A DNA stretch of 64,000 bases from Ascoidea asiatica JCM 7603 (lineage: Eukaryota > Fungi > Ascomycota): the NCBI GenBank assembly GCA_001600695.1, contig BCKQ01000007.1, positions 391,183-455,182 of the forward strand, given 5' to 3'. The notes beneath the pieces were generated by a model that had not been told where the DNA came from, searched no databases, and worked only from the letters and a program-made list of their open reading frames with translations. A program made the translations under genes and the position numbers. This document shows positions 21,733-52,806 of this stretch, in pieces (the first letter of the stretch is position 1; each line of letters opens with the position of its first letter).

Positions 21733-21751
21733 ACTGAGACCACTTTTGTGG
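21733..21751 (-). repeat. Dispersed 19-bp element, copy A
   Basis: ACTGAGACCACTTTTGTGG is the exact reverse complement of 44166-44184. Confidence 0.85.
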
Positions 21752-21830
21752 ATGAATGAAAACACAGTTTTGGTTACTTTTTCAATTAAAAAGTAAAAAG
21801 CACAAAGAAAAAAGGAAAAAAAAAAAAAGT

Positions 21831-21901
21831 TGCGTAAGCCCGGAATTGAACCGGGGGCCCAACGATGGCAACGTTGAATTTTACCACTAAACCACTTACG
21901 C
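21831..21901 (-). tRNA. tRNA-Gly(GCC)
   Basis: Reverse complement GCGTAAGTGGTTTAGTGGTAAAATTCAACGTTGCCATCGTTGGGCCCCCGGTTCAATTCCGGGCTTACGCA; forms a cloverleaf; T-run downstream. Confidence 0.96.
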
Positions 21902-22206
21902 TTACATGACTCAAGGATGAGAACAAATTTTCACAACTTAAGGGAAGGTTTTTTGAAATAGATTTTTTTTTTTTTTATTTTGGAATTTTTTAGTGATAAA
22001 AGTAATTATTGTCTCATTAATGGATATAAAAGTCAATAAATTAATTGAATAAATAATAGAATTTCTGTTTCTTCGTAGCAAATTGGTTAAAAATAAAGAA
22101 AATGCGAGAAATATGTGATAAAAAATTGAAAAAAAAAGAACTAAAATATTCAAAAAATGATATCTAAACGAATACCAAAAAGCAAAGCGAGTAGCACAAA
22201 AAAGGA

Positions 22207-22278
22207 CTCCGCGACGGGGAATTGAACCCCGGTCTGCCACGCGACAAGCGGCAATTCTAGCCACTAAACTATCACGGA
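22207..22278 (-). tRNA. tRNA-Asp(GTC)
   Basis: Reverse complement TCCGTGATAGTTTAGTGGCTAGAATTGCCGCTTGTCGCGTGGCAGACCGGGGTTCAATTCCCCGTCGCGGAG; T6 terminator follows. Confidence 0.96.
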
Positions 22279-22869
22279 TTTTTCTTGTATTTTCTTGTAA
22301 AAATATTTTTCAAACATTCATTAGTTCAAAAGTAGTAGTACAAAATCAAGATTGAACCCTTTAAAACCATCCATTTATTTTTTATTTCTTTTTAGTGTGA
22401 TAAATTGAAGTGTAGGGATGAAAAAGTAAAAAAAACCCTAAAAAAAAGAAAGAAACCACGACTTTCAAATACTTCTTCTGGTTGGAATATAATCGATTGA
22501 GTTGGTCGTGAAGCTAAGCCAAATTCTGAGCCTTTTACGATTGAAGTGTGTACATTAATTGGTGTTTTTTTAACCCGCAATCCACATCAATACCTGTGAT
22601 TCGTGGAGTGCCCCAAACAAAAAGTACAAAAAAGTCCCGCGCATAACTGGCACAACGCTAAAGCCAAGAATCCAGGCCAAGAAAAGCGTAACCCGTAATT
22701 TCACCTTCCATCAAATCCACGGGTCACCAGCCACGATACACTAACAGTTTTAGTTCCGGGAAGCCTTTGCGTTTTTCAATCTAGACCCCCAGTTCCGGTC
22801 AACTCTTCCTCTCACTTCCGGGAAATTCCTGATGCAATTGTGTACTTGCCCGATTAGGTGTTCAATGAT

Positions 22870-22893
22870 CTAAAGTGAATATATTCACTTTAG
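22870..22893. repeat. Perfect 24-bp palindrome
   Basis: CTAAAGTGAATATATTCACTTTAG equals its own reverse complement. Confidence 0.8.
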
Positions 22894-23739
22894 TTATTCT
22901 AAGCATTGCTTTCACCAGTACAAATCTGTAGCTGTGCTAAATATACGGGCTCATCCATCGATATTAAATTTGAAAAAGACCATTTAGTAATTTTATTCAA
23001 ATAAAATCAAATCAATATATTCAAATACAAATTTTAAAGTATCTTTATTGTTTTTTAAGTAAAAGAATTCAATGAACAATGTTCAATCATTAGATTACTT
23101 GGCTGTGATCTAAATATCTTATTCGATCTCTTTGTATGGGCTATTCTTATTCTTCTGCGTTTTTGTAATAATTATACAGTAGTGTTTTGTAGCGTTGGGG
23201 AATTTTACTGTAATGTGGTTCCTATCATGCCATGCATTTTATACACTGATTTAAAAACAAAAGCAATATTTCCAAATTTCACTTTTAATTTCAAATTCTA
23301 CTTGACTTTTTTGACTTTTTTTTTTCTATTTTACTGGTTAAATTTGACGATCCGAAAACAGAAACCATATTTTACTATTAGTAGATAATCTAATTATCAT
23401 AATCTCATATAATATCTTATAATATCTTATAATATTATATAATTTTTATATTTATTATCATTAATTATATGTGGCGTATTTTATAAGCTAATTTTTCATT
23501 GATTTTTATAATCATTTATTCCATTATCAATACTATTTTTTTTTATATAGAATTTTTTACTCTATTGTAATTTGTATCATTTTATTCTAAAATATTTCTT
23601 TATCAACTAATAATCATTAATTATATTTTGTAAATCATTTCATATTACTTTATTTCAATTTCTAAATTTACAAATTATTAGATATTTTATAAAATACCCA
23701 TTTAATCAATCCTAGATTATAAATTCTATTATATATAAA

Positions 23740-25119
23740 ATGTCTACTAATATAGATTCTTATAATCATAATTATTCTCCTATTCAAAATGAAATTTTAA
23801 ATCATTCAATTATAAATAATGTTCAACTTGAAAAACAAATGAAAATTCTTCAACATAAAATTCAAATTATTGAAAATGATCAACAACTATTAGAAAAACA
23901 AGTTAAAAAAAAATTTGCAGGAATTAAAGATACTAATTTATTGTCAATTATTAATTCAAATAATAATAATAATCAAATTATTCAACCTGCTGATTTAAAT
24001 TTAAAAACTTATTCTTCATTATCTGGTCATAATGAAGAAATTCAATGTATTACTTGGGCAAGAGATTCAAAACATCTTTTAACTGCAGATGTAGCTCATA
24101 GAATGTTATATTGGGATGCAACTTCTGGTTTTAAATTATGTATAATGCGTTTAAATCCAACTGAATATACGATGTCTTCTGCGATTTCTCCAGATTCAAG
24201 ATTAGTTGCTTCTGGTTCTTTAGATAATAAATGTTCTGTATTTAGATTACCTGATTTCAATTTTTTATACTCCCATAATGTTTCAAATAATATTAATAAT
24301 AAAGAACCAAATGGAAACTCTATTCAATTAAAAAATTTAATGACTCCTTCAATATTAACTGTTTTAAAATTTAAAGATAATCAAGGTTCAATATCTTCTT
24401 GTCATTTTATTGATAATAATTCTTTATTAAATTCTTCTGCAAAAAAAATATCTCTTTGGGATTTAAATAAAAGTATAGCAAAAGTTGAATATGAAGAAAA
24501 TATATCTGAAATTTTATCTTTAGAAACAAATTTTGAAAATCCGAATCCTTCAAATGAAAATAAAAATTTATTCATTGCAGGTGGTATACGAAGTTCTGTA
24601 AGAATATATGATTATAGAATAGAGAATGCAATTTTAAAACATAAAATACCTGGAGACAAAGATCCTCATAATCAAAGAAGATTTTATAATGATGTAACTG
24701 CTGTTAAATTTTTACCAAATGATAATTATTATGCTGTTGGAACTTCAACAAGAGAAGTATATATATATGATTTAAGAGTTGGACCTGTTGAATTACAAAA
24801 ATTCACAACTCCTGATGAATATAAACCAAGAAATACAATGAATGATTATAATATAAGTTATGGTGGAAATGGAAGTCCTTCAATACTCACTCTTTCTTCT
24901 GATTTCGATGATGATGGAATCATGGATATCAATTTCAGTAATTCTGGAAGATTAATGTTTACTTCTGTAGATAATATTGGTGGTTTAATCTGGGATATAT
25001 TCACTGGAAAAGTAATTCAGCAGTTGCCAACCACTCGTCATATGAGAATCAGTCCTGATGGTCTTGGTTTAGCTGCAGATACAAATAAAAATGCTGTAAA
25101 TATTTGGGCTCCATCATAA
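23740..25119 (+). CDS. Heterotrimeric G-protein beta subunit-like WD40 protein (divergent Ste4-like)
   Basis: N-terminal coiled coil; LSGH..I..WARDSKHLL..WDATSG.K; AISP..LVASGSLDN; YDLR; FSNSGRLMF; ISPDGL. Many canonical residues are altered. Confidence 0.78.
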   Translation: MSTNIDSYNHNYSPIQNEILNHSIINNVQLEKQMKILQHKIQIIENDQQLLEKQVKKKFAGIKDTNLLSIINSNNNNNQIIQPADLNLKTYSSLSGHNEEIQCITWARDSKHLLTADVAHRMLYWDATSGFKLCIMRLNPTEYTMSSAISPDSRLVASGSLDNKCSVFRLPDFNFLYSHNVSNNINNKEPNGNSIQLKNLMTPSILTVLKFKDNQGSISSCHFIDNNSLLNSSAKKISLWDLNKSIAKVEYEENISEILSLETNFENPNPSNENKNLFIAGGIRSSVRIYDYRIENAILKHKIPGDKDPHNQRRFYNDVTAVKFLPNDNYYAVGTSTREVYIYDLRVGPVELQKFTTPDEYKPRNTMNDYNISYGGNGSPSILTLSSDFDDDGIMDINFSNSGRLMFTSVDNIGGLIWDIFTGKVIQQLPTTRHMRISPDGLGLAADTNKNAVNIWAPS

Positions 25120-25453
25120 TTGTTACCTTAATTTTTATTTTTATTTTTATTTTTGTTAACTTTTACTGTTTTTTTATTGTCTGTTGTTCACTAACTTCAT
25201 TGAGTTTCCTTGTCTTTTTTTTATTATTCAAAAGTATAATTATTAATCATTTTCTTTTCTTGAAATGCCTGTTTGCTCTTTCTTTCTTTCTTTCAATTTT
25301 TTTTCTATTGTTTTCTACATTTTCTTCTTTTTTTTGAGATTAATTTAGTTTTTACATAGGATATCTACAGTAATTTACTTCCACGAATGTTTTTTTTTTC
25401 TTATTTCACGTTAAATCATTTATTGTATGTATTTATTTTTTAATTTTTTTTTT

Positions 25454-26842
25454 TCAAATCTTATATTGCTGATAATCCCTTTCTTCTAACTGTCCATTGA
25501 AAAATTTTTCTAATTTTGTACAAATTTTACTATAATATTGATTTTTTATATTATATGTTCTACAATTTTTAAGAATTAATTTCACATCAGAAACAAATTG
25601 TTCAAATTTTTCATAAATTCCATTTTCTAATTTTTCTTCCATTGTTGAAAAATCCATTGGTTCTTTAATTATTGAAAAATACCCAGGAGCTTCTTTTTCT
25701 GTAACTGGAGCTAAAAATGGTCCAGAAACTGGATGACTTTGTAATTCTGCTAAAATATCTTCCATATGTTCATAAAATGAACCTTTTTTAGGTTTTTGTG
25801 CTAAATTATCCATTTCTAAAGTCCATCCAGTTTCTTTAAGTCCAGGAATTAACATTGGATCAATTTTTGCATTTGGATTATCTTTAAAGATTTTTAAACC
25901 AGGTCTAATAATATTTGAAGAATTTTTATGATTCATAGATTTAATTTTTTGTTCAATTGCCATTTTTTGTAATACTAAAATCTTTTGAGAATCAAGATAT
26001 CTAATTTTTGGAACAATTGTACATTGCATAAGTTTTACACCTTCATAATTTTTTATATATCCATCCCATAATTTTTTATCTAAAGTAACTTTTTTAGTAA
26101 AACCTTGTTTTTGAAAATAACCAACAGCAGAATTATCAGCACAAGTTAAAATATGTTTAATTTTTGTTCTGGAAGTGATATAATCTTTTAAATGATTCAT
26201 TAATAAAGCTCCATCACCTCTTCTTTGAGCTGTAGATGAAACTGCACAAAATGCAATTTCTGCAAAACCTTTTGATTCAAATGGTCTATATGTTATTCCA
26301 CCAAATACTTCCAATTGTTTTCTTATTAAAGCTATAGATATATGATTTTTATCGTAAATCAATCTTGATATATATTGAGGAGGCATTTCAGGTAATTGTT
26401 TATGAAATACATTTTTAAGACCAGTGATAATCTTCAAACTTTCTTCAGAATCATCATTATTTACAACTTTGAATTCTATATCACCTTTTTTTTCTTCAAC
26501 CACTGCTACTTTTTCATTAAAACTATAAATATTCTTACCAGGAAGTTTTACATTATAAGTAACTGAAATGTTTTGAGGATCATCAGATTTTACTTCTTCT
26601 ATTTCAATTTTATTATAAAGTGGATTTTTATCTAATAATGTATCTTTTTTTTTTAATTCAAGTGATTCACTTAACTTATCTTCTTCTTTATCTTTGATTT
26701 TATTACTATCATATTTGAAATCAGATTTTATTCCAGTTTTATTTTCTTCATTATTGATTTTTTTTTCAATTTTTAGTTTTTTATTTGAAATTTCTTCATT
26801 GATTAATGATTCATCCTCAATTTCTCTTTTGATATGATGCAT
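25454..26842 (-). CDS. GCN5: Gcn5-type histone acetyltransferase (GNAT + bromodomain), divergent
   Basis: IEFKVVNND; KQLPEMP; GGITYRPF; FAEIAFCA; LMNHLKDY; GYFQKQGF; bromodomain PF..PV..Y..IIKEPMD..NCRTYN. May be a paralog rather than the ortholog. Confidence 0.8.
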   Translation of the reverse strand: MHHIKREIEDESLINEEISNKKLKIEKKINNEENKTGIKSDFKYDSNKIKDKEEDKLSESLELKKKDTLLDKNPLYNKIEIEEVKSDDPQNISVTYNVKLPGKNIYSFNEKVAVVEEKKGDIEFKVVNNDDSEESLKIITGLKNVFHKQLPEMPPQYISRLIYDKNHISIALIRKQLEVFGGITYRPFESKGFAEIAFCAVSSTAQRRGDGALLMNHLKDYITSRTKIKHILTCADNSAVGYFQKQGFTKKVTLDKKLWDGYIKNYEGVKLMQCTIVPKIRYLDSQKILVLQKMAIEQKIKSMNHKNSSNIIRPGLKIFKDNPNAKIDPMLIPGLKETGWTLEMDNLAQKPKKGSFYEHMEDILAELQSHPVSGPFLAPVTEKEAPGYFSIIKEPMDFSTMEEKLENGIYEKFEQFVSDVKLILKNCRTYNIKNQYYSKICTKLEKFFNGQLEERDYQQYKI

Positions 26843-26987
26843 TTACTCTAGACTCAGATTAAACAATCACAGCTACTTAAAAGACTTTTGATAAACAGAT
26901 TATAATGATTTTATAAAACAACTTGATTCAAAGCAAATTCAATTCATTTATGAGATTGTTGGCTGACAGTGCTGCTTTTTTATCGTG

Positions 26988-27319
26988 ATTTTGTGACGTT
27001 CAAATTCTTTTTTGCAGGCAAATTTTTTTTTTATATGGCGAAATTTGAAACTCTCTGAGGTTCTGAGAAACTTCACAGCCTTAAAGGATGATTTATTTTT
27101 ACAAAATTGAGCATTATAAAGAAGAGTGATAAATCCATGAAAAGTAAAAAAGAACAAGTATTTCATATAACTTATCAAATGGTTTATATTAGTTATTGAT
27201 GAAGTCTGAGCAATATAGTGTATATAATATAATACAGTGTACAAGACGTTGCTTATATAACTTATATAAACAGACACAAACCAAATTCAAAAAACTAACT
27301 ACATCTCCATGCCACAAAT
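26988..27319. promoter_or_regulatory. MSE-like (Ndt80/Sum1) sites upstream of the GCN5-like gene
   Basis: GTCACAAAAT (minus strand, 26988-26997); GACACAAA (27273-27280); GCCACAAAT (27311-27319). Confidence 0.45.
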
Positions 27320-27677
27320 GAGTAATCAAAATAAGTGGAAAATGGAATCGATTGAGATATTATATAAAACTGTAAATAAAAACCATAAAATTAAAAGTCA
27401 AATGAAACAAACTAAGAAAACATAAGCCCTAAAGAAAGTATTGAATTAATAAAGAAAAATAAAGAAAAAAATAAAATATAACAAATCTCAAAAACCCTTA
27501 GAATTCTTGAAAAAATATATTAAAACACAAAGATAAATAAAACAGAAATAAGAAATAACAACTATCATTTAGCTGATTTTAATAATACAAAAAAACTAAC
27601 CCAATTGAAAAATTTTATAAAGAAAGAAAACAAAATTAAAAGAAAAGAAAAAAGATAAAAAGGGATTATTAGTAAAA

Positions 27678-29567
27678 TTACCAATCTTCTACAAACAAAC
27701 CAACTTTAGCTTTTGGGTCTGGTTTCAGACTATCCAATTTATTATCAAGTACATCATTTGCATTATCAGAAGTTGAAATATTTTTATTTAATTCTTTATT
27801 TGTATTTACATCTTTTATTTCATTTTCTAAATTATTCTCGATAATATTATTAGTTGGAGATTCAACATTTATTGAAGATTCATCTTGGATTGGAATTTTA
27901 GGCATAACTAATTCTTTATAATCTTCCAATTCTTTTCTTAATTTTGCAGATAATTTATTTTCTTCTAAATCATATTCATTTAGAATTTTTGATTTTTCAT
28001 TATCTAAAGTAATTTTCAATTCTTTTTCTTCAATTTTTAAATTTTTTAGAATTAATTGATTTTCATTTAATATTGATTTTTTTTCATCAATTAAATTATT
28101 AATTTTTAAATTTTTTTCATTTTTTAAATTTAAAATTTCTAATTTTTTTGATTTTTTATCATCTTTTTTTTCTTCTTTTAATAGATTTGAAATTCTAATT
28201 TGTTCTTGTTTTAATCTTAATTTTTCTTCTTTAATTAATCTTTGTTCTTCATTATATTGAAAATCTAATTTTTTTTGAGTATTAACTCTTTCATTAATAT
28301 CATTTAAAATTGGATTAACATTTTTTAAAGCCATATTATTAATTTCATCATGAGATAAATATAAACCAGCACCAATATCAATTTTATTTTTATTTGGATT
28401 TGAATTTCTTTCTTTTGCTAAATCCATTGCAACTTTAATTGCATGTGCATTTAATTCTGGATTACCAAAAATATAATTAGTTGAATGATCTTTATTAATA
28501 TTATTAATTCTTTCTTTTGCTAAAATTTCAGCTTGAATTAAAACAGAATTATTAAGTTTTGAATATTTATAAATATCAGAATTATCTTTTTTAATATTTT
28601 TAGTTGCATGAATTGCACTACTTTTAATATGATTATCAATATTATCATTAGAGTTTGTTGAAAAATTAGTTTGTAAACCAGTTCTATAATTAGTTTTTGG
28701 AGTTGATAATCTTTGATTTAAAGAAACATCAGCTTTTGAAAGAGCTTTTTGATGTAAAGTATTAATATTATAATTACTACTATCATTGATTATTGATTTG
28801 GCATTTGATGTTGAAGTTGAAGAAGATGATGAATATGATGAAGATTTATTAAGATTTGAAAAAGATTTAGCAGCATTTAAAGCACCTAAAGAATTTGAAG
28901 AAGATGGTTTTTGATTTTTTAATAAATTTTGATGAATTCTAATTTGATTATTTAAAGATTTAACAGAATTTAATCTTGCTTTAATTGCAGCATTTTCAGC
29001 ACCATAAAAATAATTTATATTTTCATTTGAATTTTCATTATTTATATTTGAATTTGGATCCCATTTAATAGGAATTTTAGTATTATGTTTTGCATTAATT
29101 GCAGCAGAAGAAGATAAGAAATTATCAGGATCAATTGAATTTATATAATTTGAATTTGAATTTATTGTAGAAGTTGAATTTGTATTTGAATTTCTTACAG
29201 CAGAATTTGAAGCATTTGAAGCTTGAATTGAAGAATTTTTATCAATTTTATATGGTTTAAAATTATTATTTAAATTTTTTGGAATTGAATTAATTGCAGA
29301 TAAAGCAGCAAAATTTGTACTTTTTTTATCTGGTAAACCAATTGTTGGTTTATCAGGATTATTATAAATACCATATTTTAAATTTGATTGATAAATTGCA
29401 GCTTTTGATAAATTTTTACTATTATTTTTATAATTTGGATTATTTATAATTGAAATATTATTATTATTATTATTTGAAGAGACTGAAGATGTTGATGTTG
29501 ATGATGATATTGGTAATTTTGAAAAATCTATTGGATTTAAATTTGAATGTGATTTTAATTCAGACAT
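27678..29567 (-). CDS. EIS1: Eisosome protein Eis1-like
   Basis: LSKAAIYQSNLKYGIY; IDIGAGLYLSHDEINNMA.K.V.PIL.DI.ER eisosome motif; coiled coil; C-terminal GLFVE. Confidence 0.72.
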   Translation of the reverse strand: MSELKSHSNLNPIDFSKLPISSSTSTSSVSSNNNNNNISIINNPNYKNNSKNLSKAAIYQSNLKYGIYNNPDKPTIGLPDKKSTNFAALSAINSIPKNLNNNFKPYKIDKNSSIQASNASNSAVRNSNTNSTSTINSNSNYINSIDPDNFLSSSAAINAKHNTKIPIKWDPNSNINNENSNENINYFYGAENAAIKARLNSVKSLNNQIRIHQNLLKNQKPSSSNSLGALNAAKSFSNLNKSSSYSSSSSTSTSNAKSIINDSSNYNINTLHQKALSKADVSLNQRLSTPKTNYRTGLQTNFSTNSNDNIDNHIKSSAIHATKNIKKDNSDIYKYSKLNNSVLIQAEILAKERINNINKDHSTNYIFGNPELNAHAIKVAMDLAKERNSNPNKNKIDIGAGLYLSHDEINNMALKNVNPILNDINERVNTQKKLDFQYNEEQRLIKEEKLRLKQEQIRISNLLKEEKKDDKKSKKLEILNLKNEKNLKINNLIDEKKSILNENQLILKNLKIEEKELKITLDNEKSKILNEYDLEENKLSAKLRKELEDYKELVMPKIPIQDESSINVESPTNNIIENNLENEIKDVNTNKELNKNISTSDNANDVLDNKLDSLKPDPKAKVGLFVEDW

Positions 29568-30645
29568 TTTTGAAAATGTTTATTATGATTTATTATTATT
29601 GATAGATAAGGATTGATAAGGATCGATAAGGAATATAAGTAATTTGAATAATTGAATAATTGAATGAATGGGGAACGAATAAAAGAATAAAACCTTTTGA
29701 TATTTGATTCAAGTTCTTTTTCAAGTAAGTTATTTGAATACTCAATTGATTAATATAATAAAATAAAATAAAGGAATTGATTTGAATAAAATATAATATA
29801 ATATATAAATTACTTCAATTCAATAAATACTAAATGAGTATTAAATTTGAGTATTAAATTCAAAATATATTTGCTGGATGAGTCTGGAACTGGAGCTGGG
29901 AAATGAAACGAGCGAAAGCAACTTCAGTTCGCAAACACAGGAACACGCGGCTGCGGAAACACATCCAGGCACGGATTATATAGTCATGTGACATTGCTAA
30001 CGTATGTTACATAACTCGAGTTACGTAACGTCAAAAAAAAAGGAAAACAACCAGCACCTGGAAAATGACCAAAACGCAGGTGCAACGCAAGTCAAAGGTG
30101 TTTACGCAAGTCTGCAGCGCGCAATTTCATGACAAGAACCGAGCAATCCGAGCTAGTAAAAAAGGAAATACCCTCGAGCTGCTATTTCCAAAACCGGGAA
30201 ATGCGGCTGGTGCTATTATTACTGTAACTATTATTTTGATTATAATCACTGCACGTGCTGTGTTATTTAATAAAGTCATAAGTCCGCCATTATTTCCTCT
30301 TCTGACACACACGCAGCTTCGAAGATTCACAAGAAGCAAAAAAATCACTTTTTATTCAAACTCCATCACAAGTGAAAAGCTTTTTAAATCTTCTCACAGG
30401 TCAAAAATCCAATTAACCTCTCAAAGTTATAAAACTTCATTCAGTTTCTATTAATCTATCTAAGCAAAAAATGAAAAAAAAATGAAAATAATCAAAGATA
30501 AATTGAAAATAATTAGCATTTGAAACTTTATAGCAAACCACACTGGAAAAAATAAACAAAGAAGAAGAGAACGAAGAAAAAACAAATCATATTTATCAAA
30601 ATCATGGAGTCAAAAAAATATATTACCAAATTAGTTATAGCTAAC

Positions 30646-34355: not shown

Positions 34356-34400
<45 letters not shown>

Positions 34401-35914: not shown

Positions 35915-36012
<98 letters not shown>

Positions 36013-37880: not shown

Positions 37881-37940
<60 letters not shown>

Positions 37941-39216: not shown

Positions 39217-41518
39217 GATTATATTAATATATTTTTATCAAATGGAATTTGAATGAAATTTGAAGTATATATTGGAATGTAATGGAGTAAATTGAAATGA
39301 ATTGAAATTTTATTAAATTAAAATGAAATGAATTGAATTGAATTGAGATGAAATGAAGTGAGATGCAATAAGTATATTATAAATGATTAAAATTTCTAAT
39401 GAGATGAATTGTTTTTTTTTTTTTTTTCATTGAATGAAACATATGATATTGATCATAATATCAATAAGATATAATAGTTATGTAAATAAAATAAATGAAA
39501 AATAATATGTGAGTTAAAGAAGAAGAATAGTAATAGTAATAGGAATAGTAATATTATTATTATTATTATTATTCTTATATTAATAGTATGAAACCAAGTT
39601 TACTAGTGTAATAAATAAGCTACTTGTAATACGAGTGTAATGTATTGATATAAATATTACACTGCAGTAGTGGAATTAGTATTGTTATGATGAATAGATT
39701 TTATTAATAGCTACACTAGTCACAGTAGTACTATTATAATTAGTAGATCTTTTACTTGGATAGACTTTTTTCTTAAATTACTTCTTGATATTCCCTTTAG
39801 TTATTAAAATGTTAATAATAATAAAAATAATAATAATAACTACTTTCTTATTTAATAAAGAAGTTATTCAAAGTAATGAAAAAAGAAAAGAGAGAAATAA
39901 AAAGAAGATTCAAGGAGAGTTAAATTTTAAAAAATTGAAAGATTCCGGTAAAAATTTACCAAATTTAAATATCAGTATGAAAAGTTGTAGAAGATGTCAG
40001 AGACGACAATGCTTTTTTTTTAAAATTAATTATCTAAGTTGATTAATTGATTGTCCCTTGGCAAATAAGTGGTATGGGATAATATTAAGACACAATTTTA
40101 CATTAAAAAGCTAATAAAAAAAAAGCTATTTAGAGAAAGTTTTTAAATTTATTGAAAGATCAAATGAAAAATTGAGTGAAACTTGACTTGATATTTTAAT
40201 ATTACTTTATTTTAATAGTAATAGTTAGTTTATTAATTTTAAAATGGTTTATTTTTTTTTGGTAATTTCACTTTATTTGATATTTCACTTTATTTGAGAT
40301 TTATTTCAGTCCAGATTTCACCTGAGATTTCGCTAGAGATTTCACTGCAGACCAAATTTGGACTGAATTTTGAAGAAAAAATGAGAAAAGTGAGCGGTTA
40401 CGTAAGCATACAACACCAGCCACCAAAATCTCCCTAAAAAACCTACAGCAGCTTAATGCATCAAAACACAGATTTAACACAGTACCTTTAGACTGGTCCT
40501 GCGTTGCCAAGGCGGAAACGGAATCTCCGGAAAGATAATTATCAACGTGGCTGGTGAAAATATATTTGACCAGCCACTTTGATGGCTCGGAAGTGTTTTA
40601 GAAAAACTATTTCCTCTTCATGAGACATGAAGAGGATCCAGAAAACTGGTTTCCGAAAACATTGAATCCATTTAATTGGCGCTAGTTTAGCTACAATTGA
40701 ATTAAAATATTATACTGTGGATTGCTTATAAAAGAACCAATCCACAAGACAGATGCATGCACTATATATTTTATGTCCCTGCCCTAAAATAAAAATAAAA
40801 ATAAAAACCCACGGCACGTGAAACTTCAATCTCGCTCACGTGCCGTTTACATCCGCGTGTTCCATTTCTCGTTCCGCAAAACAATCCCAAAACAATCCTA
40901 GAGAAAAAACCAAAAAAAGACCTGAGCCAGAGCCAAAACCACAGCCAAAGGCAAAAAACGTGAGGAAACTGAAAACTGGCGCTGAATTTGAATTCACGCT
41001 TTGATCTTTTCCTGATTTTGTTCACTCTTTCACTTCCAGAGAAGAGAATCCCACCTTTTGAATTCAAAATATAATTTATATCATTATATTACATTTATTT
41101 CACCTATTTTACTTACTTCACTTATTTCAATTATACTTCAATTCTTCTTTTATTTTATATTTTATATATTCATATATTCATATATTATTCAATATATAAT
41201 TCTGTTTATAATTCAATTTATTTTTTAATTATATTCTAAAGATCATAAATTTCCTCCTATATCTATTATTTTGTTTTAGCTTATCTTAAATTCTAAAGGA
41301 TATTTCAATATATAAAATATATTCAAAAAACTTTATCTAAAGATTACATTAAAAATCTTTTCTTAAAAGTTTCATTCAAAAGTTTTATTTACTATTTTTA
41401 TTTAAAAGTTTCATTAAAAAACTTCATTTAATAAGTTTCATTTTTTTTTTTTTTTTTTTTTTATAAATTAATAAATTAATAAATTAATATCAAAATATCA
41501 AAATATATATAATTAATA

Positions 41519-43618: not shown

Positions 43619-44165
43619 TTGAATTATTTATTCATTATTTGATTTAATCTAATCTTTTAATTCATTCATACATATAACCTATATACATTCTGTATATATA
43701 TATAATTATTCTATATCATTAATTTAGTCATTCTTTAGTCATTTTTTTATTTTGTTATCTGTTTAAATGTTGTTATTTTTATAAATTTTTATCAATTTTT
43801 ATCAATTTTTATCAATTTTAAAAATTTTATAGTCATTTTTTCATTTTATTTAGATTTTTATGATTAATTCATTTCTCTTTTTTAAAATTTCATTTTTATT
43901 AGGATATTGATTTCTTTAAAAAAAAAAAAGGGGAAAAATGAGAATATTCAATAACAATAGCTATTCATCTGAGATTCAAATTCCGTTTGTAATCCATATT
44001 ATCGAATAGTCAATCGTATTTATCATTAATAATAGATGATTTGATCTCTAACCAGAGTAAAGTAACTTTATGATTATTTTTGAATTCCAAATTGGGAAGT
44101 TTTAAAATTGATTTGTATCATTTACCACATTAATTTAATCAATGATCAAAATTGAAATTTCAAAC

Positions 44166-44184
44166 CCACAAAAGTGGTCTCAGT
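44166..44184 (+). repeat. Dispersed 19-bp element, copy B
   Basis: CCACAAAAGTGGTCTCAGT, an exact inverted match to 21733-21751. Confidence 0.85.
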
Positions 44185-44204
44185 AATTTATTTATTAAAT
44201 TATA

Positions 44205-44329
44205 CCGGGTAACCAGTAGTGTTTTTGCTTTTAACTGTTTTGGGCCGTGTTGTGACTGCGATATTTAATAGTTGCGTATATCTTGTTCTGTAAGCGTAAT
44301 CATAAGACCATTATATATTTATCACGTGA
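44205..44329. promoter_or_regulatory. RPL26 promoter: Reb1-type and Cbf1-type sites
   Basis: CCGGGTAA at 44205-44212; TCACGTGA at 44322-44329. Confidence 0.5.
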
Positions 44330-44648
44330 AGAGCACAAACTCTCACGATGAAGTTGCTTTTTGTTTGTTCGGCTGACTACGCGGGCAGAGCTTCTTTTAG
44401 CTGTTCTGCTTACGCTCTGATTACGTGATTGCTTTCTGAACCTTTTCAAGGAAGAGTTTTATTCCAGTGAATATTGAATATGGAATATTGAGCATTGAAT
44501 ATGGAAGAGTGAATGAAGGTGGAATATGAAATATTGAATATTGGATATTGGATATTGAATATATTAAAGAATTTATGATAAATTTTGAATTTTAACACCA
44601 AATAATAACAGTGATAATAATAATAATAATAATAATAATATACTAAAA

Positions 44649-45618
44649 ATGAAGATCAGTCAAGGTATGTTGAATTATAAAAAATGTGAATGATAGAATT
44701 AAAATAGGTCATATTCTAAAGATATATTATATTCAAATTAAAAAATTAAATAATGAGAAATGTAGAAGAAATTAAAGGAATTTATATTAAGTTAATAAGA
44801 AAAGTTATTTGGATTTTTCAATTTTAAATTTATCTTCTAATGAAAATGAATCAAAAGTTTTCAGGACTGTATTTAAAAGCACTATATAATAAATCGAAAA
44901 GGAAATTGAAAAAGTACCATTCGAAATCTTAAATGGATATAAAGTTCTTGAAGTTTTTTCAAAATTGGCTATTGATTTGAAACTTATCAATAATAGGTTA
45001 TCAAAAATGTTAAATTAATCATATTTCAAGTTCTTTTCGAATTTCTTTTAGAGATTTCATAAAAATAATGAATACATTATTACTAAACAATACAAAGAAT
45101 CATTATAAGAACTACAGGAATATTAATATGAATTAAAATATCATAATACCTTTTTACATACTCTTTCAATGACATTCATTTCAAATAATTAATAAAATCT
45201 CATCAAAAACTAACAATTTTTTTTTTTTTTTTTCCAATTTTTTATTAAAATAGACGTTTCAAGTTCTAGAAGAAAAGCTAGAAAAGCTTATTTCACAGCA
45301 CCATCTTCAATTAGAAGAAAATTATTATCTGCTCCATTATCAAAAGAATTACGTGAAGAATATGGTATTAAATCTTTACCAATTAGAAAAGATGATGAAG
45401 TTAAAGTTGTTAGAGGTTCAAAAAAAGGTCAAGAAGGTAAAATTTCTTCAGTTTATAGATTAAAATTTGGTGTTCAAATTACTAAATTAACAAGAGAAAA
45501 AGCAAATGGTGCTTCTGTTCCATTAAATATTCATCCTTCAAAAGTTGTTATTACTAAATTACATTTAGATAAAGATAGAAAAGCTTTAATTGTTAAAAAA
45601 GGTGGTAAATCTGAATAA
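44649..45618 (+). CDS. RPL26: 60S ribosomal protein L26 (uL24), 2 exons: 44649-44664 and 45254-45618
   Basis: Exon 1 ATGAAGATCAGTCAAG|GTATGT; acceptor TAG at 45253. The spliced product is [64 protein letters not shown] (126 aa). Confidence 0.95.
44665..45253 (+). other. Spliceosomal intron of RPL26 (589 nt)
   Basis: GTATGT donor; AACTAAC branch point at 45208-45214; poly-T tract; TAG acceptor. Confidence 0.92.
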
Positions 45619-46086
45619 ATATTAAATTATTAAATAATTATTAACTAATCAATCAAATAAATCAATTTTTATATCTATTTGTAGTTAAATAAAATAAAAT
45701 AAAATCTTATTTATTGAAAATAAATGTAATAATGTATTCTAATTTCAAGTTCTTTTTTAATCTAAAATACTAATTTGTAAGTCTTTCTTTCAACTCTTGA
45801 TCATTTCTACATTATTTTGATAATTATAGTACATTTATTTAAAATTATTTATTTTTTAAACAGAAAAAGAGAAAAAAGAAAATAAAAAATGATTGAAAAA
45901 CAAAAATAAAAAAAACTTAATGAAATAAATAATAAAAAATGTTTAAAAAGTATATGAAAATGTATTTTATTGTAATTTACTGTATTTGAATGAAATGAAA
46001 TGTTTTTCCCACTTTGTTTTGTTTCATTTTGTTTATATGATAATTGATATGCTATAGAAATTGATTTTTTAATAAAATATTTAAAA

Positions 46087-46986
46087 TTAAAACTTTTTTC
46101 TCATTTTTTGAACTTTTTTATATTGACCTCTACCACTATTTTGAGTTTGTTGAATTTCAGAATATTTTCTCTTGAAATATGATTTTTTATCATTGTCTAA
46201 CATTATTTCTTGTAATAAAGATCTTGATTTGATTTTTTTATTTGGATTTAAATTTAAATTAATATTTGAATCAATAATTGTACCCATTTGAAAAAATTTT
46301 GGAATTTGCCATTTATCTTTTTTATAAAATCTTTTTGGATCTAAAGCATTTCTTTGTTGTAATAAAATTAAATCTCTTTTAATATCTTTTGTAATTTCAG
46401 GTTTTGACATATTAAACCATTGATCACCAGAATCGTTTGGATCCATTTTTAATTTCTTTTTCTCAGATTTGGTTAATGGTTTTCCTAAATTATTTTTGGA
46501 ATTTTGAATTTCTTTTGTTTTTTTAATATTTTCATTAATATCTTTTTTTGCCATAATTAAATAATCTTTTTCTCCAAAAGTTTTATCATAATGACGTTTT
46601 TCTAAGGTTGAAATTAAAAGTTTTTTAGGTAATGAATTTATTGAATTTTGAATTGAACTTAATGAATCTTTTTCCAATGTTAAAGAATTGGAACTTGCAT
46701 TTGAATTATTTGAATTAATATTTGTTTTTAATAAACTAAATAAATCATCCATTTGTAAATTATTGAAATCTTCTGCATTACTTGTATTTATCAAATTATT
46801 ATTCATTGAAGAAACAGTTGTAGTAGTTATAGAAGATTGAGTATCAGAATCTTCACTTTGATGAGCATAGCTTGTTATTGATTCTGTAGTTGACTCTATG
46901 GTTGAAGAATCAGATAAAACAGCAGAAGCAGCAGCAGCAGCAGAATTGATAGAATCCTGAGTAGCAGATTCTTGGAATGTCAGCAT
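46087..46986 (-). CDS. FCF2: rRNA-processing protein Fcf2
   Basis: WFNMSKPEIT..KRDL..R.ALDPKRFYKK..PKFFQMGTII..YFKRKYSEIQ..SG. Confidence 0.88.
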   Translation of the reverse strand: MLTFQESATQDSINSAAAAASAVLSDSSTIESTTESITSYAHQSEDSDTQSSITTTTVSSMNNNLINTSNAEDFNNLQMDDLFSLLKTNINSNNSNASSNSLTLEKDSLSSIQNSINSLPKKLLISTLEKRHYDKTFGEKDYLIMAKKDINENIKKTKEIQNSKNNLGKPLTKSEKKKLKMDPNDSGDQWFNMSKPEITKDIKRDLILLQQRNALDPKRFYKKDKWQIPKFFQMGTIIDSNINLNLNPNKKIKSRSLLQEIMLDNDKKSYFKRKYSEIQQTQNSGRGQYKKVQKMRKKF

Positions 46987-47218
46987 ATCGTTTATATATC
47001 AACACTTGAATAAAGCAATTAGGAAATAAATCTATCTGGAAATAATATAATAAATAATACAATAAACTACTTCTTCTGTTTCCTTCTCGTTGCTTTTCGA
47101 TCCCTCTGCTGAAAAAGACTTGCACTTTTCTACGCTTTTCTCGCTTTGGAGTCTTCGCAGTCTCAGCAACGTTCTTTTTTGAGGAAATAAAATAAAATAA
47201 TTTTTTTTTATTAGAGAC

Positions 47219-47238
47219 TCACGTGATGAATGCTCATC
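47219..47238 (-). promoter_or_regulatory. Cbf1-type site and PAC motif upstream of FCF2
   Basis: TCACGTGA at 47219-47226; GCTCATC (GATGAGC on the minus strand) at 47232-47238; fits a ribosome-biogenesis gene. Confidence 0.5.
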
Positions 47239-47491
47239 CACAACATGTTTATTTAAGGGTACGAGGCGCAGTTAAATGATGGCTGGTGATTTTGAAATAA
47301 GGACTCCCCCAGAACTGGCTTTGAATTGAATATAAATATAAAACTAACAGTCAAATTTTTATACTACTTTTGATATTTAAAACAACAGTTTCTTATATAC
47401 TGTATATATATAGTTATAGAAAGTGAAATGAATTAAAATAAATTAAAAGGTCTATGAAAAGAACAAGAATTGAACAAGATCACAAATATTA

Positions 47492-48915
47492 TCAATATTT
47501 TTTTTCAGTATTATTAAACAGTCTACTATACTCCAACCATTTTGAATAAATTTCTTCTTCAGTAAATCTTACATGTTTTGATCTATAAAATAGTTTTTCT
47601 TTTTTTTGAAATATCATAATGTCATAAGCTTCACTCGCATAATTTTTCACTATATTCTCATAAAATTCTCCACATTTTTTACAAAAATCTAGTGATCCTG
47701 AATATCCCATCATCCATTTAAGAGGATTTGATCTATTACATTGAGTACATCTTGCTATAGAACCATTTTTAAGTCTAGACTTTTTCATTTTTGTTTTGGA
47801 TCTTAATCCGAAATTTGGATCATCAGGAGTTTTTTTGCTTGTACTAGGAAGAATAAACTTTAAATACTTTGGTTCAGGTTGGGAATAATCTGATGTGGAA
47901 TGAAAAGGTTGACAATAATTAGAAATCTTAGGGAAAGTATTGAAATATTGATTATAAGCATTATTTGTATTATTGTTAAACATTGGATTTATATTTGAAG
48001 GTTGTGTAGTGGAATTTATTGGTAATGTTTTCTCAACTGTTTCTGACTTTAATTCATAATTTATAGGACATTGTGGATGATTAATCGGTTCAGAAATGCT
48101 TTGATGTTGTTGTTGTTGTTGTTTTTGATCAAAAAACTGGCCATTGATAGAAACACATTTTTTTTTCACTTTTGATAAATCTGTATTATTATCGGTTTTA
48201 AATTTATAATTATTTTGAAGTGTAGATATTGGGTGAGCAATAGAAATATCATTTTTAGCAAGCACAGGATTTATTGAAGAATCATTAGATTGAACTTTTT
48301 CTTCTTTTTCTTCTTTTTCTTTACCTTTATTTTTAATTTTAGTTTTAGTTTTAGTTTCATTTTCCTTTTTAGTTATTCCAATATATTTTGGAGGTAAAAT
48401 ATTTTTTTTAGTTATAAGATAATTTTTTAAACTATATTTAGAACTACTAATAATTTTTTTATTAGAATTAAAATCAAAATGATGTAATAACGTACTTATT
48501 TGAGTAGTTTTAAAGGTAGGAGCTAAAGGTGGTGGTATAGCTTTGAAATAATTTAAATTTTTAAATATTGTAGTATTAGGATTATTTATTTGATTTATTA
48601 GTATATTATTATCAATATTATTATTAATAATAATATTATTATTATTATTATTAATATTATTATTATTATTATTAATATTATTATTATAAGAATTATCATT
48701 ATTATAAGTATTACTATTATAAAAATTATCATTATTATAAATATTACTAGCATAAATATTATTATTATCAATTCTATCTTGTTTTATAAATTGTACATCA
48801 GAATTATCAGACTTACCAGACTTATCAGATTCTTCAGATTCCTCAGATTCATTGGATTCATTGGATTCATTGGATTCATCAGATTGAGGCTCAAGAGTGT
48901 TATTGATAACATGAC

Positions 48916-48960
<45 letters not shown>

Positions 48961-49480
48961 GATAATAGTTATAATCATAGTTATTCCCATAGTTATTATC
49001 AATAGAATTTGAGATTGAATTAGATGCTGAAGAAATATTTTGATTATTTAATAATTGAGAAGAAGTACCAACACTATCTCTAAGTTGATTTGTAGGAATT
49101 ATAAAGTTTTCTTGATTATAATTATCTATGTTGAATTGATTAATTTGATATGGTTGATAATATTGATTATGTTGATTATATTCATCATATTGATCAAACT
49201 GATTAGATATATCAAATTGATTTGTTTGATAAGAAAAAGCATTTTCAGTATTTTCAGTATTTTCAATATTTTCAATATTTCGATAAGGTTGATTATTTTG
49301 AAAAGTTAAAACTGGAACAGGAACTGGAGCAGAAGCAGGAGATAAATAATGAGAATTATTTAAATTATTAGGTACTTGAGTTATACTTTGTTGATTTGAA
49401 TAATTGAAATTTTGTTTAGATGAGTAATTTATTTTATTATTTTGATTTATATATTGATTTTTATAATTATTTTGTTCCAT
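47492..49480 (-). CDS. Asn/Gln/Tyr-rich protein with a degenerate C-terminal GATA-type zinc finger
   Basis: CTQC-x18-CKKCGEFY with W and G at the canonical positions; the rest is low complexity. Confidence 0.65.
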
Positions 49481-50212
49481 TTTTTTTCAAATAAAAAACT
49501 AAAAAATATGCAAATAACATATTTTATTAGCAAGAATTTAAGTAAATTAATTTAAATAAAAGAATTTGATATTTTTTTAACAATTGAATTTTTTTTTTTA
49601 TTATTTAAGATGTTGAATTAACCAAATTAAAAGAATAAAAGGCTTTCCTAATATATATTTTTTGAATAATAAATAGAATACTCTACTTTTTCAATAAGGA
49701 TATAGTATATACTAGTAATATGATATTCCATTGACAATACTTCATTGTATCAGCTATAAACAAAGATCATGTTGATTCAGTAGTGGGTTTTAAAAAACAT
49801 AGCTGTGAATTAATCTCATTAACATTGTTGTATATATTGGATTTAGTCTTTGGTCTTTGTTTTCATTCAAACCACAAAAGAAAATAAGTGAAGAATTGGA
49901 GAGAATAGCCCATTTTAGTTACTTTTCTATTCCTAAAGAGAGTGGTCTCTTATTGAATAAGAATGAAAGAATCATTTATTTACAGTACTCTATCTTAAAG
50001 GATTCACTCTGTCTTATCCAATTCTGGGTTTGATTCATCATTTCAATACTTCCAAAATATGAATTTATCAATAATTATTTATCAGTAAATTATTGTATTT
50101 TATCAACTATTGTTTATTTTTATACGTATTTAACTTTTGCCGACAAATTCGGTTACTGTCAAACAATAAAAATAAAAAAAAAAAAATAAGTAAGTAAGAA
50201 AGAAAAAAAGGA

Positions 50213-50286
50213 TGGTCCCTAGCAGGATCGAACTGCTGATCCCCGCGTTATTAGCACGATGCCTTAACCAACTGGGCCAAGGGACC
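50213..50286 (-). tRNA. tRNA-Ile(AAT)
   Basis: Reverse complement GGTCCCTTGGCCCAGTTGGTTAAGGCATCGTGCTAATAACGCGGGGATCAGCAGTTCGATCCTGCTAGGGACCA; T-run downstream. Confidence 0.96.
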
Positions 50287-51020
50287 TTTCCTGTTGGAAA
50301 CAGTTATTTTACAATTTCTTGTTCACTACAGATAAACACCACTCTAGGACACATTTTCTGTCCCTGGATGTCCTGTATATATAATTGTTTTGTCTCTGAT
50401 TACATCAGCACCCACTCCCATGGCTCCTTCCCCGGCTCTTTGTCTGCTTCGTCTCTCTCGAACTCCCAGAACATTCGCTTTGAACATTCGCATCAAACTT
50501 TTGTATTTACTTTCCCAGTCAATTCTGGGCTCGAGGTTTACCAGCAATCTTGACTGGAGTTTTGCTTTGATTCCACTCCAAATTTTAGGTTAGGGTCTAA
50601 AGGCTTAGCGTATTTCATCTTTTAGAGCAACTAGTTTCACTTCCTAAATTTTCACCTGTTTTTAGTCAATTCATGCTTAAATTCATGAAAAAACTAAAAA
50701 AGAATGCTTGTTTTATTCCATATTATATTTGCTATTCCATTCAATTCTATAGATTCTATCAATTGATTATGTTTTACATAATATTTACATAATGTTTACA
50801 TAATGTTTACATCATTTGTAATTAAAATATTTATTTAATTCTGATAATTTAAATCAGTCCTGTTTTGTTGTTTTTCTTTTCTATTTTTTCTTCAAAAGGA
50901 AAGTAAAATATATATTCTTTTTTTTTTTTCTTCTTTTTATTATTATTTGAATCTACATACTTTAAAAAATTCAAATAGTTATAGAATACTTTTAATATAC
51001 CTTATATATAAAATTTAAAA

Positions 51021-52670
51021 ATGGAATATAATAGACCAGCTGTAGAAGTACCTTCTCAATCCAATCAAAATAATAATCAAGAGAATTCTCAAGAGAATAA
51101 TTATTCTCAAAAACAACAATCAAATTCAAAAAATTATAATAATAATCAAAATTTACAACCAAATAATAGTTCAAAAGATAGTGGTAGTCAAAATTATAAT
51201 GATAATAATGATAATAATAACTATGAAAAACCAATAAATTCAGAAAATTTTGAAGAATCTTTTAAAACAAAAAATAAATTTCATGATATTCCATTCACTA
51301 TTTTTTTTTTACTTGTTTTATCTGGTTTTATTGCAATTTCAATTATTACTTTAAGATCTTATTCAAAAACTTATTCATTTCAAGGTAATAGTATTTATGA
51401 TTCTTCAAATTCTTCATCTTTAGATACAAATGCTGTAATTTGTTTAATTTTTGTAACTGTTATTGCATTAATTTTTGCAATTTTAACAATGATTCTTGCA
51501 AGATCTTATCCAAAAAAATTTATAATTATTGGTTTAATTACAAATATTATTTTTTCAATTGGTACTGCAATTGCATATTTTATTATGAAATATTGGTCCG
51601 CAGCTATAGTTTTTTTAATATTTGGTTTATTTTCTGCTTGGATTTATTGGAGTTGGAGAAGTAGAATTCCATTATCTGCAACAATTTTAACAATAATTAT
51701 TAATGTAATGAAAGATCATCCAATAGTTTTATGGATTTCATTTTTAGGTGCTTTAATATCTTCTGCTTTTGCAGTATTATTATCAACAACAATTGTTGCA
51801 ACTTATATAAAATATGATAATAAATCAAATAATCCTGGTTGTTCAGTATCTGGTGGTTCATGTTCAAATGCAAAATTAATTGGAATTTTAGTTTTTATAA
51901 TTTTTTCAGGTTATTATATTTCTGAAGTTATAAAAAATATAATTCATTCAACAATTTCTGGAATTTATGGAACTTGGTATTACCTTTCAAAATCTGATCA
52001 AGGTTATCCAAAACATCCTGCTTTAGGTGCATTTAAAAGAATAATTTTATATTCTTTTGGTTCAATTTGTTTTGGATCTTTAATTGTTGCAATTATTGAA
52101 AGTTTTAGACAATTAATTAATATTGCAAAACAAAATGCAATTAATACTGGTGATAATTTTTCTGCAATTTTTTTATGTTGTTTAGATTTATTAATTGGTA
52201 TAATTCAATGGATTGCAAGATATTTTAATCATTATGCTTATTCATATATTGCTTTATATGGTGGTTCATATATTAATGCTGCAAAAAATACTTGGAAATT
52301 AACAAAAATCAAAGGTATTGATGCTTTAATTAATGATTCTTTAATTGGTACTTCATTATCAATGTTTTCATTATTTAATGGTTATATTACATGTTTATTT
52401 ACATTTTTATGGTTAAGATTAACAAAACCAAATTATAATAATTCAAATAGTTTTTATTTACCTTTAATGGCATTTTCTTTTTTAATTAGTGGACAAATTA
52501 TGTTAATTACAACAACTGTTATTACTAGTGGTACAAGTACTTTTTTCATTTCTTTAGCAAAAGATCCTGAAGTTTTCAAATCTTCTTATCCAAATGAATT
52601 TGATCAAATTTTTAAAAATTATCCTCAAGTTATGAATAAATTAATGGATACTCATGCAGAAGCTGTTTGA
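51021..52670 (+). CDS. PNS1: Choline-transporter-like (CTL) membrane protein Pns1
   Basis: KFHDIPF; RSRIPLS; SFGSICFGSLIVA; FNHYAYSYIALYG..Y..AAK.TW; GIDALIND. Confidence 0.9.
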   Translation: MEYNRPAVEVPSQSNQNNNQENSQENNYSQKQQSNSKNYNNNQNLQPNNSSKDSGSQNYNDNNDNNNYEKPINSENFEESFKTKNKFHDIPFTIFFLLVLSGFIAISIITLRSYSKTYSFQGNSIYDSSNSSSLDTNAVICLIFVTVIALIFAILTMILARSYPKKFIIIGLITNIIFSIGTAIAYFIMKYWSAAIVFLIFGLFSAWIYWSWRSRIPLSATILTIIINVMKDHPIVLWISFLGALISSAFAVLLSTTIVATYIKYDNKSNNPGCSVSGGSCSNAKLIGILVFIIFSGYYISEVIKNIIHSTISGIYGTWYYLSKSDQGYPKHPALGAFKRIILYSFGSICFGSLIVAIIESFRQLINIAKQNAINTGDNFSAIFLCCLDLLIGIIQWIARYFNHYAYSYIALYGGSYINAAKNTWKLTKIKGIDALINDSLIGTSLSMFSLFNGYITCLFTFLWLRLTKPNYNNSNSFYLPLMAFSFLISGQIMLITTTVITSGTSTFFISLAKDPEVFKSSYPNEFDQIFKNYPQVMNKLMDTHAEAV

Positions 52671-52787
52671 AATTTACCTTATTTATCTTTTTATTCTATA
52701 TCTATTTATATACAGTATATTAATATATATTTATTCTATAATAAATTACCTTTACATTAATATTAATATTAATAAATTTAACAACAC

Positions 52788-52806
52788 CCACAAAGACGGT
52801 CTCAGT
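52788..52806 (+). repeat. Dispersed 19-bp element, variant copy C
   Basis: CCACAAAGACGGTCTCAGT, 16/19 identical to copies A and B. Confidence 0.7.

What the first reader, a model, noticed from the sequence alone, without database searches (positions are those of the whole stretch)
21733..52806. Unexplained dispersed 19-bp intergenic element CCACAAAAGTGGTCTCAGT: candidate lineage-specific origin, insulator or general-regulator site
Seen: exact copies at 21733-21751 (minus) and 44166-44184 (plus), and a 16/19 copy at 52788-52806. The motif is complex and about 47% GC in an extremely AT-rich background, so chance recurrence is very unlikely. All three copies lie in the gap after the 3' end of a + strand gene (CLA4, eIF2A, PNS1), where AT-rich terminator DNA gives way to a tRNA gene or a GC-richer promoter. 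The variant keeps both arms (CCACAAA and GGTCTCAGT) and changes only the 3-bp middle, as a bipartite protein-binding site would. It is longer than typical yeast TF sites and matches none I recognise, although the left arm resembles an MSE core. Inference: a species-specific ARS/ORC consensus, a roadblock/insulator factor site, or an interstitial telomere-repeat unit.
Basis: partly seen in the sequence, partly recalled or inferred. Interest (0 to 1): 0.8.

Follow-up and report, generated by a model that had tools for sequence, protein, structure and literature searches.

The report
Unknown promoter-border motif in Ascoidea yeast
This yeast has about 500 copies of a 20-base DNA motif that sits at the upstream edge of gene promoters and matches no yeast factor site we could identify, so it is probably the binding site of a lineage-specific general promoter-organising protein.

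Summary
The three copies are real, but the 19-mer is one variant of a common, degenerate two-part motif, AGAY-CCRYA-N4-YGGTCTC. The core has 564 genome-wide matches against 42 for the reversed control, with fixed spacing. All 32 copies examined are intergenic and their flanks are unrelated. The window holds five copies, not three. The genome is very probably Ascoidea asiatica.

Sites occur in divergent and tandem gaps and rarely in convergent ones. They take either orientation, form head-to-tail clusters, and mark the step from AT-rich terminator DNA (23% GC) to the GC-richer promoter island (37%, p=0.003).

Best reading: the site of a general regulatory factor (0.7). An origin consensus is possible (0.12); telomere-repeat and transposon readings are not supported. 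The binder is unknown. The left nine bases resemble part of a Rap1 site, the genome has two Rap1-domain genes, and canonical Rap1 sites are barely enriched. No copy was found in 80 kb of partly syntenic A. rubescens DNA (suggestive, P≈0.1). Other readers of this scan noted the same motif elsewhere in this genome. There is no functional data.

The parts
21736..21755 (-).
   Evidence: PWM 23.8 bits
44162..44181 (+). Motif copy at the upstream edge of the RPL26 promoter island, about 465 bp before the ATG
   Evidence: 25.5 bits
52784..52803 (+). Motif copy 117 bp after the PNS1-like stop, at the upstream edge of the promoter island of ORF 53342-54322
   Evidence: 26.6 bits
7067..7086 (+).
   Evidence: (25.0 bits)
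40634..40653 (+). Additional motif copy (GGTTTC variant) in the divergent promoter upstream of eIF2A
   Evidence: 21.1 bits
44206..44212 (+). Reb1-like CGGGTAA site 25 bp downstream of the motif; also present in the A. rubescens RPL26 promoter
   Evidence: identity of the factor from own knowledge
44251..44258 (+). Homol-D/Rrn7-like TGTGACTG; also present in the A. rubescens RPL26 promoter
   Evidence: identity from own knowledge
44322..44329 (+). Cbf1-like E-box TCACGTGA in the RPL26 promoter
   Evidence: identity from own knowledge
44649..45618 (+). RPL26 (uL24) gene, not in the ORF list: exon 1 44649-44664, intron 44665-45253 (GTATGT, AACTAAC, TAG), exon 2 45254-45618
   Evidence: exon 2 matches Pfam Ribosomal_L26 at E 1e-37 and is 88% identical to A. 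rubescens uL24; splicing inferred from sequence
21831..21901 (-). tRNA-Gly(GCC), its 3' end about 80 bp from the motif copy

Best explanation
The element is the binding site (consensus AGAY-CCRYA-N4-YGGTCTC, about 23 bits) of an abundant sequence-specific general regulatory factor of this Ascoidea lineage, working like Abf1/Rap1/Reb1. It binds in either orientation at the upstream border of a few hundred functionally unrelated promoters. There it would keep the promoter island open for other activators and, as a likely side effect, block read-through from the upstream gene. SHOWN: motif, copy number, fixed spacing, intergenic location, promoter-side polarity, orientation independence, clustering, diverse targets. 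INFERRED: protein binding, nucleosome exclusion, activation, roadblock. The binder is not identified; my split within this model is a diverged Rap1 paralogue (alone or with a partner) about 30%, another or new factor about 70%.
For: 564 matches vs 42 reversed control; CCRTA sub-class 104 vs 2; 262 vs 4. Spacer of 5 in 88 of the first 100 hits when 2-9 was allowed. All 32 examined copies lie outside recognisable coding ORFs although 66% of the window is coding. Gap classes of 29 loci: 16 tandem, 8 divergent, 4 promoter-side only, 1 convergent. In the 16 tandem gaps GC is 0.23 on the terminator side and 0.37 on the promoter side (Wilcoxon p=0.003), with the motif pointing 8:8 with or against the gene. 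Close pairs under 200 bp are enriched (5 vs 1.3 on C1, p=0.01) and 14 of 15 are in the same orientation (p=0.001). Targets are unrelated: RPL26, HSP20, RIB3, a proteasome subunit, NSR1-like, HNT2-like, hexokinase, a bZIP gene. The motif sits beside Reb1-, Homol-D- and Cbf1-like sites at RPL26. GRFs are known to act as transcription roadblocks (PMC5052057).
Against: No functional data: no RNA runs were found, and no binding, chromatin or reporter data exist here. Not conserved in the orthologous A. rubescens RPL26 or eIF2A promoters, so conservation gives no support. The gap-class counts alone do not beat a 'long intergenic DNA' model, because convergent gaps are only about 9% of intergenic length in the window. 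Site density (1 per 36 kb) equals a typical origin density. Context rests on 29 loci out of about 500.
Confidence: 0.7

Rival explanations
1. The motif is the ORC(-Cdc6) recognition sequence, i.e. a GC-containing replication-origin consensus of this lineage.
For: About 520 sites over background in 20.3 Mb, one per 36 kb, close to the 556 origins of Y. lipolytica, whose origins are also enriched in intergenic/promoter DNA and have a long gapped consensus (10.64898/2026.03.10.710760). Some copies lie near tRNA genes.
Against: Spacing on C1 is no more even than random (CV 1.15 vs 0.98; gaps of 258, 205 and 148 kb), though weaker sites may be missed. Clusters are head-to-tail (14 of 15), whereas helicase loading is expected to use inverted sites (own knowledge). 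No clear T-rich/A-rich asymmetry around the motif, unlike Y. lipolytica early origins. Local polarity follows gene direction, not motif direction. No resemblance to the S. cerevisiae or Y. lipolytica consensus. On C1 no listed tRNA lies within 2.7 kb of a site.
Confidence: 0.12
2. A dedicated terminator/insulator site that works at gene 3' ends and has no activating role.
For: In 12 of 16 tandem gaps the site is nearer the upstream stop than the downstream ATG (30-300 bp from the stop in most). The copy at 21736 lies between two 3' ends (CLA4-like gene and tRNA-Gly).
Against: Only 1 of 29 loci is in a convergent gap, where 3' ends concentrate, and 8 are in divergent promoters with no nearby 3' end. 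No orientation bias relative to incoming transcription (8:8).
Confidence: 0.08
3. The site of a condition-specific transcription factor or factor pair (for example a dimer on CCR-N6-YGG, or two adjacent factors) rather than a constitutive chromatin organiser.
For: Clusters of 2-4 copies in single promoters are typical of UAS elements; the core is pseudo-palindromic.
Against: About 500 sites in front of unrelated housekeeping and stress genes; the consistent position at the island border suggests an architectural role.
Confidence: 0.07
4. Interstitial telomere repeat or transposon/MITE/LTR remnant.
For: The left part resembles yeast telomeric Rap1 half-sites (PMC6510891, PMC4416457).
Against: The four spacer bases and all flanks are unrelated between copies (mean flank identity 29%); no tandem arrays or pile-up at contig starts in the listed hits for C1-C28; spacing inside clusters varies (27-192 bp).
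Confidence: 0.03

Closest known systems
Rap1 binding site (KRTGTRYGGGTGT; C. albicans GGTGT-NN-GGATG; H. polymorpha Rap1A/Rap1B sites)
   Same: The left nine positions read TRYGGRT(C>G)T on the other strand, matching Rap1 positions 9' to 1' except that G2' is mostly C (match frequencies .65/.20/.56/.72/1/1/.78/.80/.90 against ACAYCCRYA). Similar placement upstream of a ribosomal protein gene. Two Rap1-DBD genes in the genome, as in methylotrophic yeasts (PMC6510891).
   Different: The second (Myb2) half-site is absent: those four positions are free. The most invariant part, YGGTCTC, lies outside the 13-bp Rap1 footprint and in inverted orientation. The canonical motif CAYCCRYACAY is barely enriched (30 vs 18).
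Abf1 site (RTCRY-N5-ACG; from own knowledge)
   Same: Two-part, fixed gap, contains CRY followed by about 5 free bases; hundreds of promoter sites with unrelated targets.
   Different: Right half is YGGTCTC, not ACG. No BAF1_ABF1 match in the genome (that search had no positive control).
General regulatory factors as a class (Reb1, Abf1, Rap1, Tbf1, Cbf1)
   Same: Abundant, orientation-independent, promoter-border sites; co-occurrence with other such sites; a potential roadblock role (PMC5052057).
   Different: The sequence matches none of them. Reb1- and Cbf1-type sites exist separately in the same promoters.
Yeast origin consensus sequences (S. cerevisiae ACS; Y. lipolytica ORC-Cdc6 motif)
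   Same: Similar number and density, intergenic, long gapped motif.
   Different: No sequence resemblance, no flanking A/T skew, random-like spacing, head-to-tail clusters.
Ndt80 MSE (gNCRCAAAW) and Rme1 element (GTACCWCAAAA) (from own knowledge)
   Same: A subset of copies contains CCACAAAA or GTACCACAAAA.
   Different: The A-run is not required (position 6 is A, G or T), the upstream G of the MSE is nearly absent (5 of 100), and neither includes the invariant GGTCTC.

Membership tests
General regulatory factor site | Hundreds of copies, far above chance, outside coding DNA | tested here: met
   564 vs 42; 32 of 32 intergenic
General regulatory factor site | Promoter-associated, orientation-independent, unrelated target genes | tested here: met
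   28 of 29 loci in gaps containing a promoter; GC step follows gene direction, p=0.003; 8:8 orientation; targets
General regulatory factor site | Bound in vivo; creates a nucleosome-depleted region; needed for expression | not testable with these tools
   no RNA, ChIP or MNase data for this organism
Rap1 site | Myb1 half-site plus linker (TRYGGGTGT-like) | tested here: inconclusive
   8 of 9 positions agree in a degenerate way, but position -3 is G 53% / C 20% where Rap1 has C; the resemblance was noticed after the fact
Rap1 site | Second half-site (KRTGT/GGTGT) in direct orientation, 7-8 bp centre to centre | tested here: not met
   positions 6-9 are variable and mostly A/T; definition from PMC4416457
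Rap1 site | Rap1 protein present in the genome | tested here: met
   two PF09197 matches over the cut-off: C8:74867-75190 and C2:1676925-1677209; sequences could not be read
Abf1 site | RTCRY-N5-ACG and an ABF1 gene | tested here: not met
   right half differs; no PF04684 match (no positive control)
ARS/ORC consensus | Roughly even genome-wide spacing at origin-like density | tested here: inconclusive
   density fits (1 per 36 kb) but CV 1.15 and gaps up to 258 kb on C1; degenerate sites may be missed
ARS/ORC consensus | A/T asymmetry tied to motif orientation | tested here: not met
   no clear skew in 26 oriented loci; small sample
ARS/ORC consensus | ARS activity, ORC/MCM binding | not testable with these tools
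   needs experiment
Telomere repeat unit | Invariant unit in tandem arrays at chromosome ends | tested here: inconclusive
   variable spacer and no arrays among listed hits; contig ends could not be fetched and no published Ascoidea repeat was found
LTR/MITE fragment | Homology extending into the flanks | tested here: not met
   flank identity mean 0.29, maximum 0.45 over 300 pairs
Grainyhead/CP2 site | CP2 gene and AACCGGTT-type consensus | tested here: not met
   no PF04516 candidate (no positive control); positions 6-9 too variable

The most novel reading that the evidence does not exclude
Since the split from A. rubescens, a new general regulatory factor arose in this lineage, either a neofunctionalised Rap1 paralogue that kept one half-site and gained an inverted GGTCTC contact or a domesticated transposon-derived Myb/SANT protein, and its 20-bp site was gained at roughly 500 promoters. 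That would be a genome-wide replacement of promoter architecture by a factor with a specificity not described in yeasts.
Probability: 0.3. Interest if true: 0.7.

Novelty: new member of a known kind. Interest (0 to 1): 0.5.

Why it matters
Turnover of general regulatory factors between yeast lineages is known, but usually among the same few proteins (Rap1, Tbf1, Cbf1, Reb1, Abf1, Mcm1, Rrn7). A long, high-information site at about 500 promoters that matches none of them, and may be missing from the sister species, gives a directly testable case of how a new pioneer-type specificity arises and spreads. The duplicated Rap1 is a concrete first candidate. If the sites proved to be origins, this would be another independently evolved sequence-specific origin code. 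I found no paper describing the motif, but the search was limited to open full text and short-motif searching is weak.

Tried and rejected
Longer (about 55 bp) shared element between copies 1 and 2, suggested by another reader: flank identity 26%, below average. Apparent absence of the motif from contigs C5 and C9: it disappeared with the CCRTA sub-class (4 and 6 hits). Non-coding RNA: Rfam finds only three tRNAs in the window. Abf1 and CP2/Grainyhead families: no match, no positive control. Canonical Rap1 motif: 30 vs 18. Relatives: no core match in Saccharomycopsis crataegensis (22 kb), two other yeast loci (12 and 22 kb) or A. rubescens (80.6 kb). ORF 53342-54322: no homologue found (blind to longer or shorter kin). 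Fold prediction of a Myb/SANT-like candidate (L030): pLDDT 44, unusable, so no fold search. Literature searches for the motif, Ascoidea telomeres and Ascoidea GRFs gave nothing relevant. The sigma-70 scan is irrelevant to a yeast. RPL26 was searched by exon 2 only, by reference; the joined model was not searched. The costly representative search was not used.
Full report
OBSERVATION. The window is 24.9% GC. The flanking genes are a PAK kinase, eIF2A and a PNS1-like transporter, and tRNA-Gly ends about 80 bp from the first copy.

ORGANISM. The assembly has 20.31 Mb in 71 contigs. The published Ascoidea asiatica assembly has 71 records (PMC6041473). The best RPL26 hit is A. rubescens (88%), and gene order eIF2A-RPL26-FCF2-CDC23 is shared with A. 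rubescens. The genome is therefore very probably A. asiatica (inference).

THE REAL UNIT. CCACA-N5-GGTCTC with one mismatch gives 514 hits against 54 for the reversed pattern, and CCNNA-N4-YGGTYTC gives 564 against 42. With a spacer of 2-9 allowed, 88 of the first 100 hits have 5. Hand tallies of 100 listed hits each give position 3 A49/G29/T12/C10, position 4 C46/T34/A11/G9 and position 14 about C77/T23. The four bases upstream are A72 (C excluded by the pattern), G53/C20, A56/T28 and T39/C33/A23. The consensus is AGAY-CCRYA-N4-YGGTCTC with a weak A-G/T-T tail, about 23 bits. The identity of the two 19-mers does not extend into the flanks (26% against a mean of 29%), so there is no repeat family or transposon remnant.

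CONTEXT. All 32 core copies in the sequence I could read lie outside recognisable coding ORFs, while 66% of the window is coding. Of 29 loci, 16 are in tandem gaps, 8 in divergent gaps, 4 upstream of a gene with nothing visible within 1.5 kb on the other side, and 1 in a convergent gap. The window itself has 10 tandem, 6 divergent and 6 convergent gaps (plus RPL26), so a model tied to 3' ends would put about half of the non-divergent sites in convergent gaps; 1 of 17 is seen. In tandem gaps oriented by gene direction, GC is 0.23 in the 100 bp on the terminator side and 0.37 in the 200 bp on the promoter side (p=0.003), whichever way the motif points (8:8).

The copy at 44166 looked as if it lay between convergent genes, but an intron-containing RPL26 starts at 44649 (only exon 2 was searched, by reference, and the joined model was left out). 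Its promoter runs motif, CGGGTAA (Reb1-like), TGTGACTG (Homol-D-like), TCACGTGA (Cbf1-like) (factor names from own knowledge). Other neighbours are functionally unrelated. Sites cluster: 5 pairs under 200 bp on C1 against 1.3 expected, and 14 of 15 close pairs across the listings are head-to-tail. After merging clusters, spacing on C1 is random-like (CV 1.15), with gaps of 258, 205 and 148 kb.

RELATIVES. I walked 80.6 kb of the A. rubescens scaffold that carries orthologues of several window genes. It has no core match, against five in the window; at the genome-average density P(0) is about 0.11. The orthologous RPL26 promoter keeps CGGGTAA and TGTGACTG but not the motif. The orthologous eIF2A divergent promoter has one sequence matching the left 16 positions but not the TCTC end; it could be a variant site or chance. 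Three other yeast loci (56 kb) have none. Lineage specificity is suggested, not established.

MECHANISM. The simplest model is a general regulatory factor. An abundant protein with two DNA-reading modules one helical turn apart binds at the upstream edge of the promoter island, keeps it accessible, and incidentally blocks Pol II coming from the upstream gene, as shown for Reb1, Rap1 and Abf1 in S. cerevisiae (PMC5052057). The sequence properties are shown; binding and function are inferred.

THE BINDER. No Abf1 or CP2 match was found (no positive controls). There are two Rap1 DNA-binding-domain genes, whereas PMC6510891 reported Rap1 duplication only in methylotrophs, and canonical Rap1 sites are barely enriched (30 vs 18). 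The left nine bases read TRYGGRT(C>G)T on the other strand, close to the Myb1 half and linker of the Rap1 consensus (PMC4416457, PMC6510891). However, the Myb2 half-site is missing, and the strongest part, GGTCTC, is outside the Rap1 footprint and inverted, though it is 4 of 5 identical to the GGTGT half-site. So this is not a canonical Rap1 site; a diverged paralogue is a lead at about 30% within the model. Other readers proposed Harbinger-like Myb/SANT proteins as binders. One Myb/SANT-like ORF carries the motif 263 bp upstream of its start (L030; Atlas score 0.85, a lead only; fold unusable), which one of 500 sites could do by chance.

RIVALS. Origin consensus (0.12): the number fits the 556 origins of Y. 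lipolytica, but spacing, cluster orientation, missing A/T skew and gene-linked polarity do not. Terminator-only site (0.08). Condition-specific factor (0.07). Telomere or transposon remnant (0.03); contig ends could not be read.

LIMITS. No RNA runs are on record. Base tallies were made by hand from the first 100 listed hits, which cover contigs C1-C3.

VERDICT. This is a real, abundant, apparently undescribed promoter-border motif. It is most likely a new member of a known kind, a general-regulatory-factor site, with an unidentified binder. Several first-stage readers of this scan noted the same motif elsewhere in this genome; that is not independent evidence. Interest 0.5.

Noticed in passing
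   Followed up: yes
G000 C8:74867-75190 (+) and C2:1676925-1677209 (-): Two Rap1 DNA-binding-domain genes (open frames of 988 and 750 aa). PMC6510891 reported Rap1 duplication only in methylotrophic yeasts.
   Followed up: partly
L030:515-1237 (-): 241-aa ORF with no Pfam hit whose Atlas features lean to Myb/SANT-like (MADF) families (0.85); motif copies 263 bp upstream and 370 bp downstream.
   Followed up: partly
window 47492-54322: Block absent between FCF2 and CDC23 in A. rubescens: an Asn-rich 662-aa ORF with a C-terminal Cys-x2-Cys...Cys-x2-Cys (GATA-like) pattern and no Pfam hit, tRNA-Ile, PNS1-like gene and an orphan 326-aa ORF.
   Followed up: partly
loci L009-L036, within 250 bp of the motif: TTACRTAA occurs at 0.57 per kb near the motif against 0.15 per kb further away (the far set includes coding DNA), so it may be a second common promoter element.
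   Followed up: partly
L041:7344-7365 (A. rubescens, eIF2A divergent promoter): Sequence matching the left 16 positions of the motif but with a different 3' end, next to a Cbf1-type E-box; possible sister-species variant of the site.
   Followed up: partly
G000 C5 and C9: None of the 63 tRNA genes scored lies on these two large contigs (that list is a lower bound).
   Followed up: no
G000 C13:91995-92118 and 111238-111361: An identical pair of motif copies appears twice in inverted orientation, suggesting a local inverted duplication.
   Followed up: no
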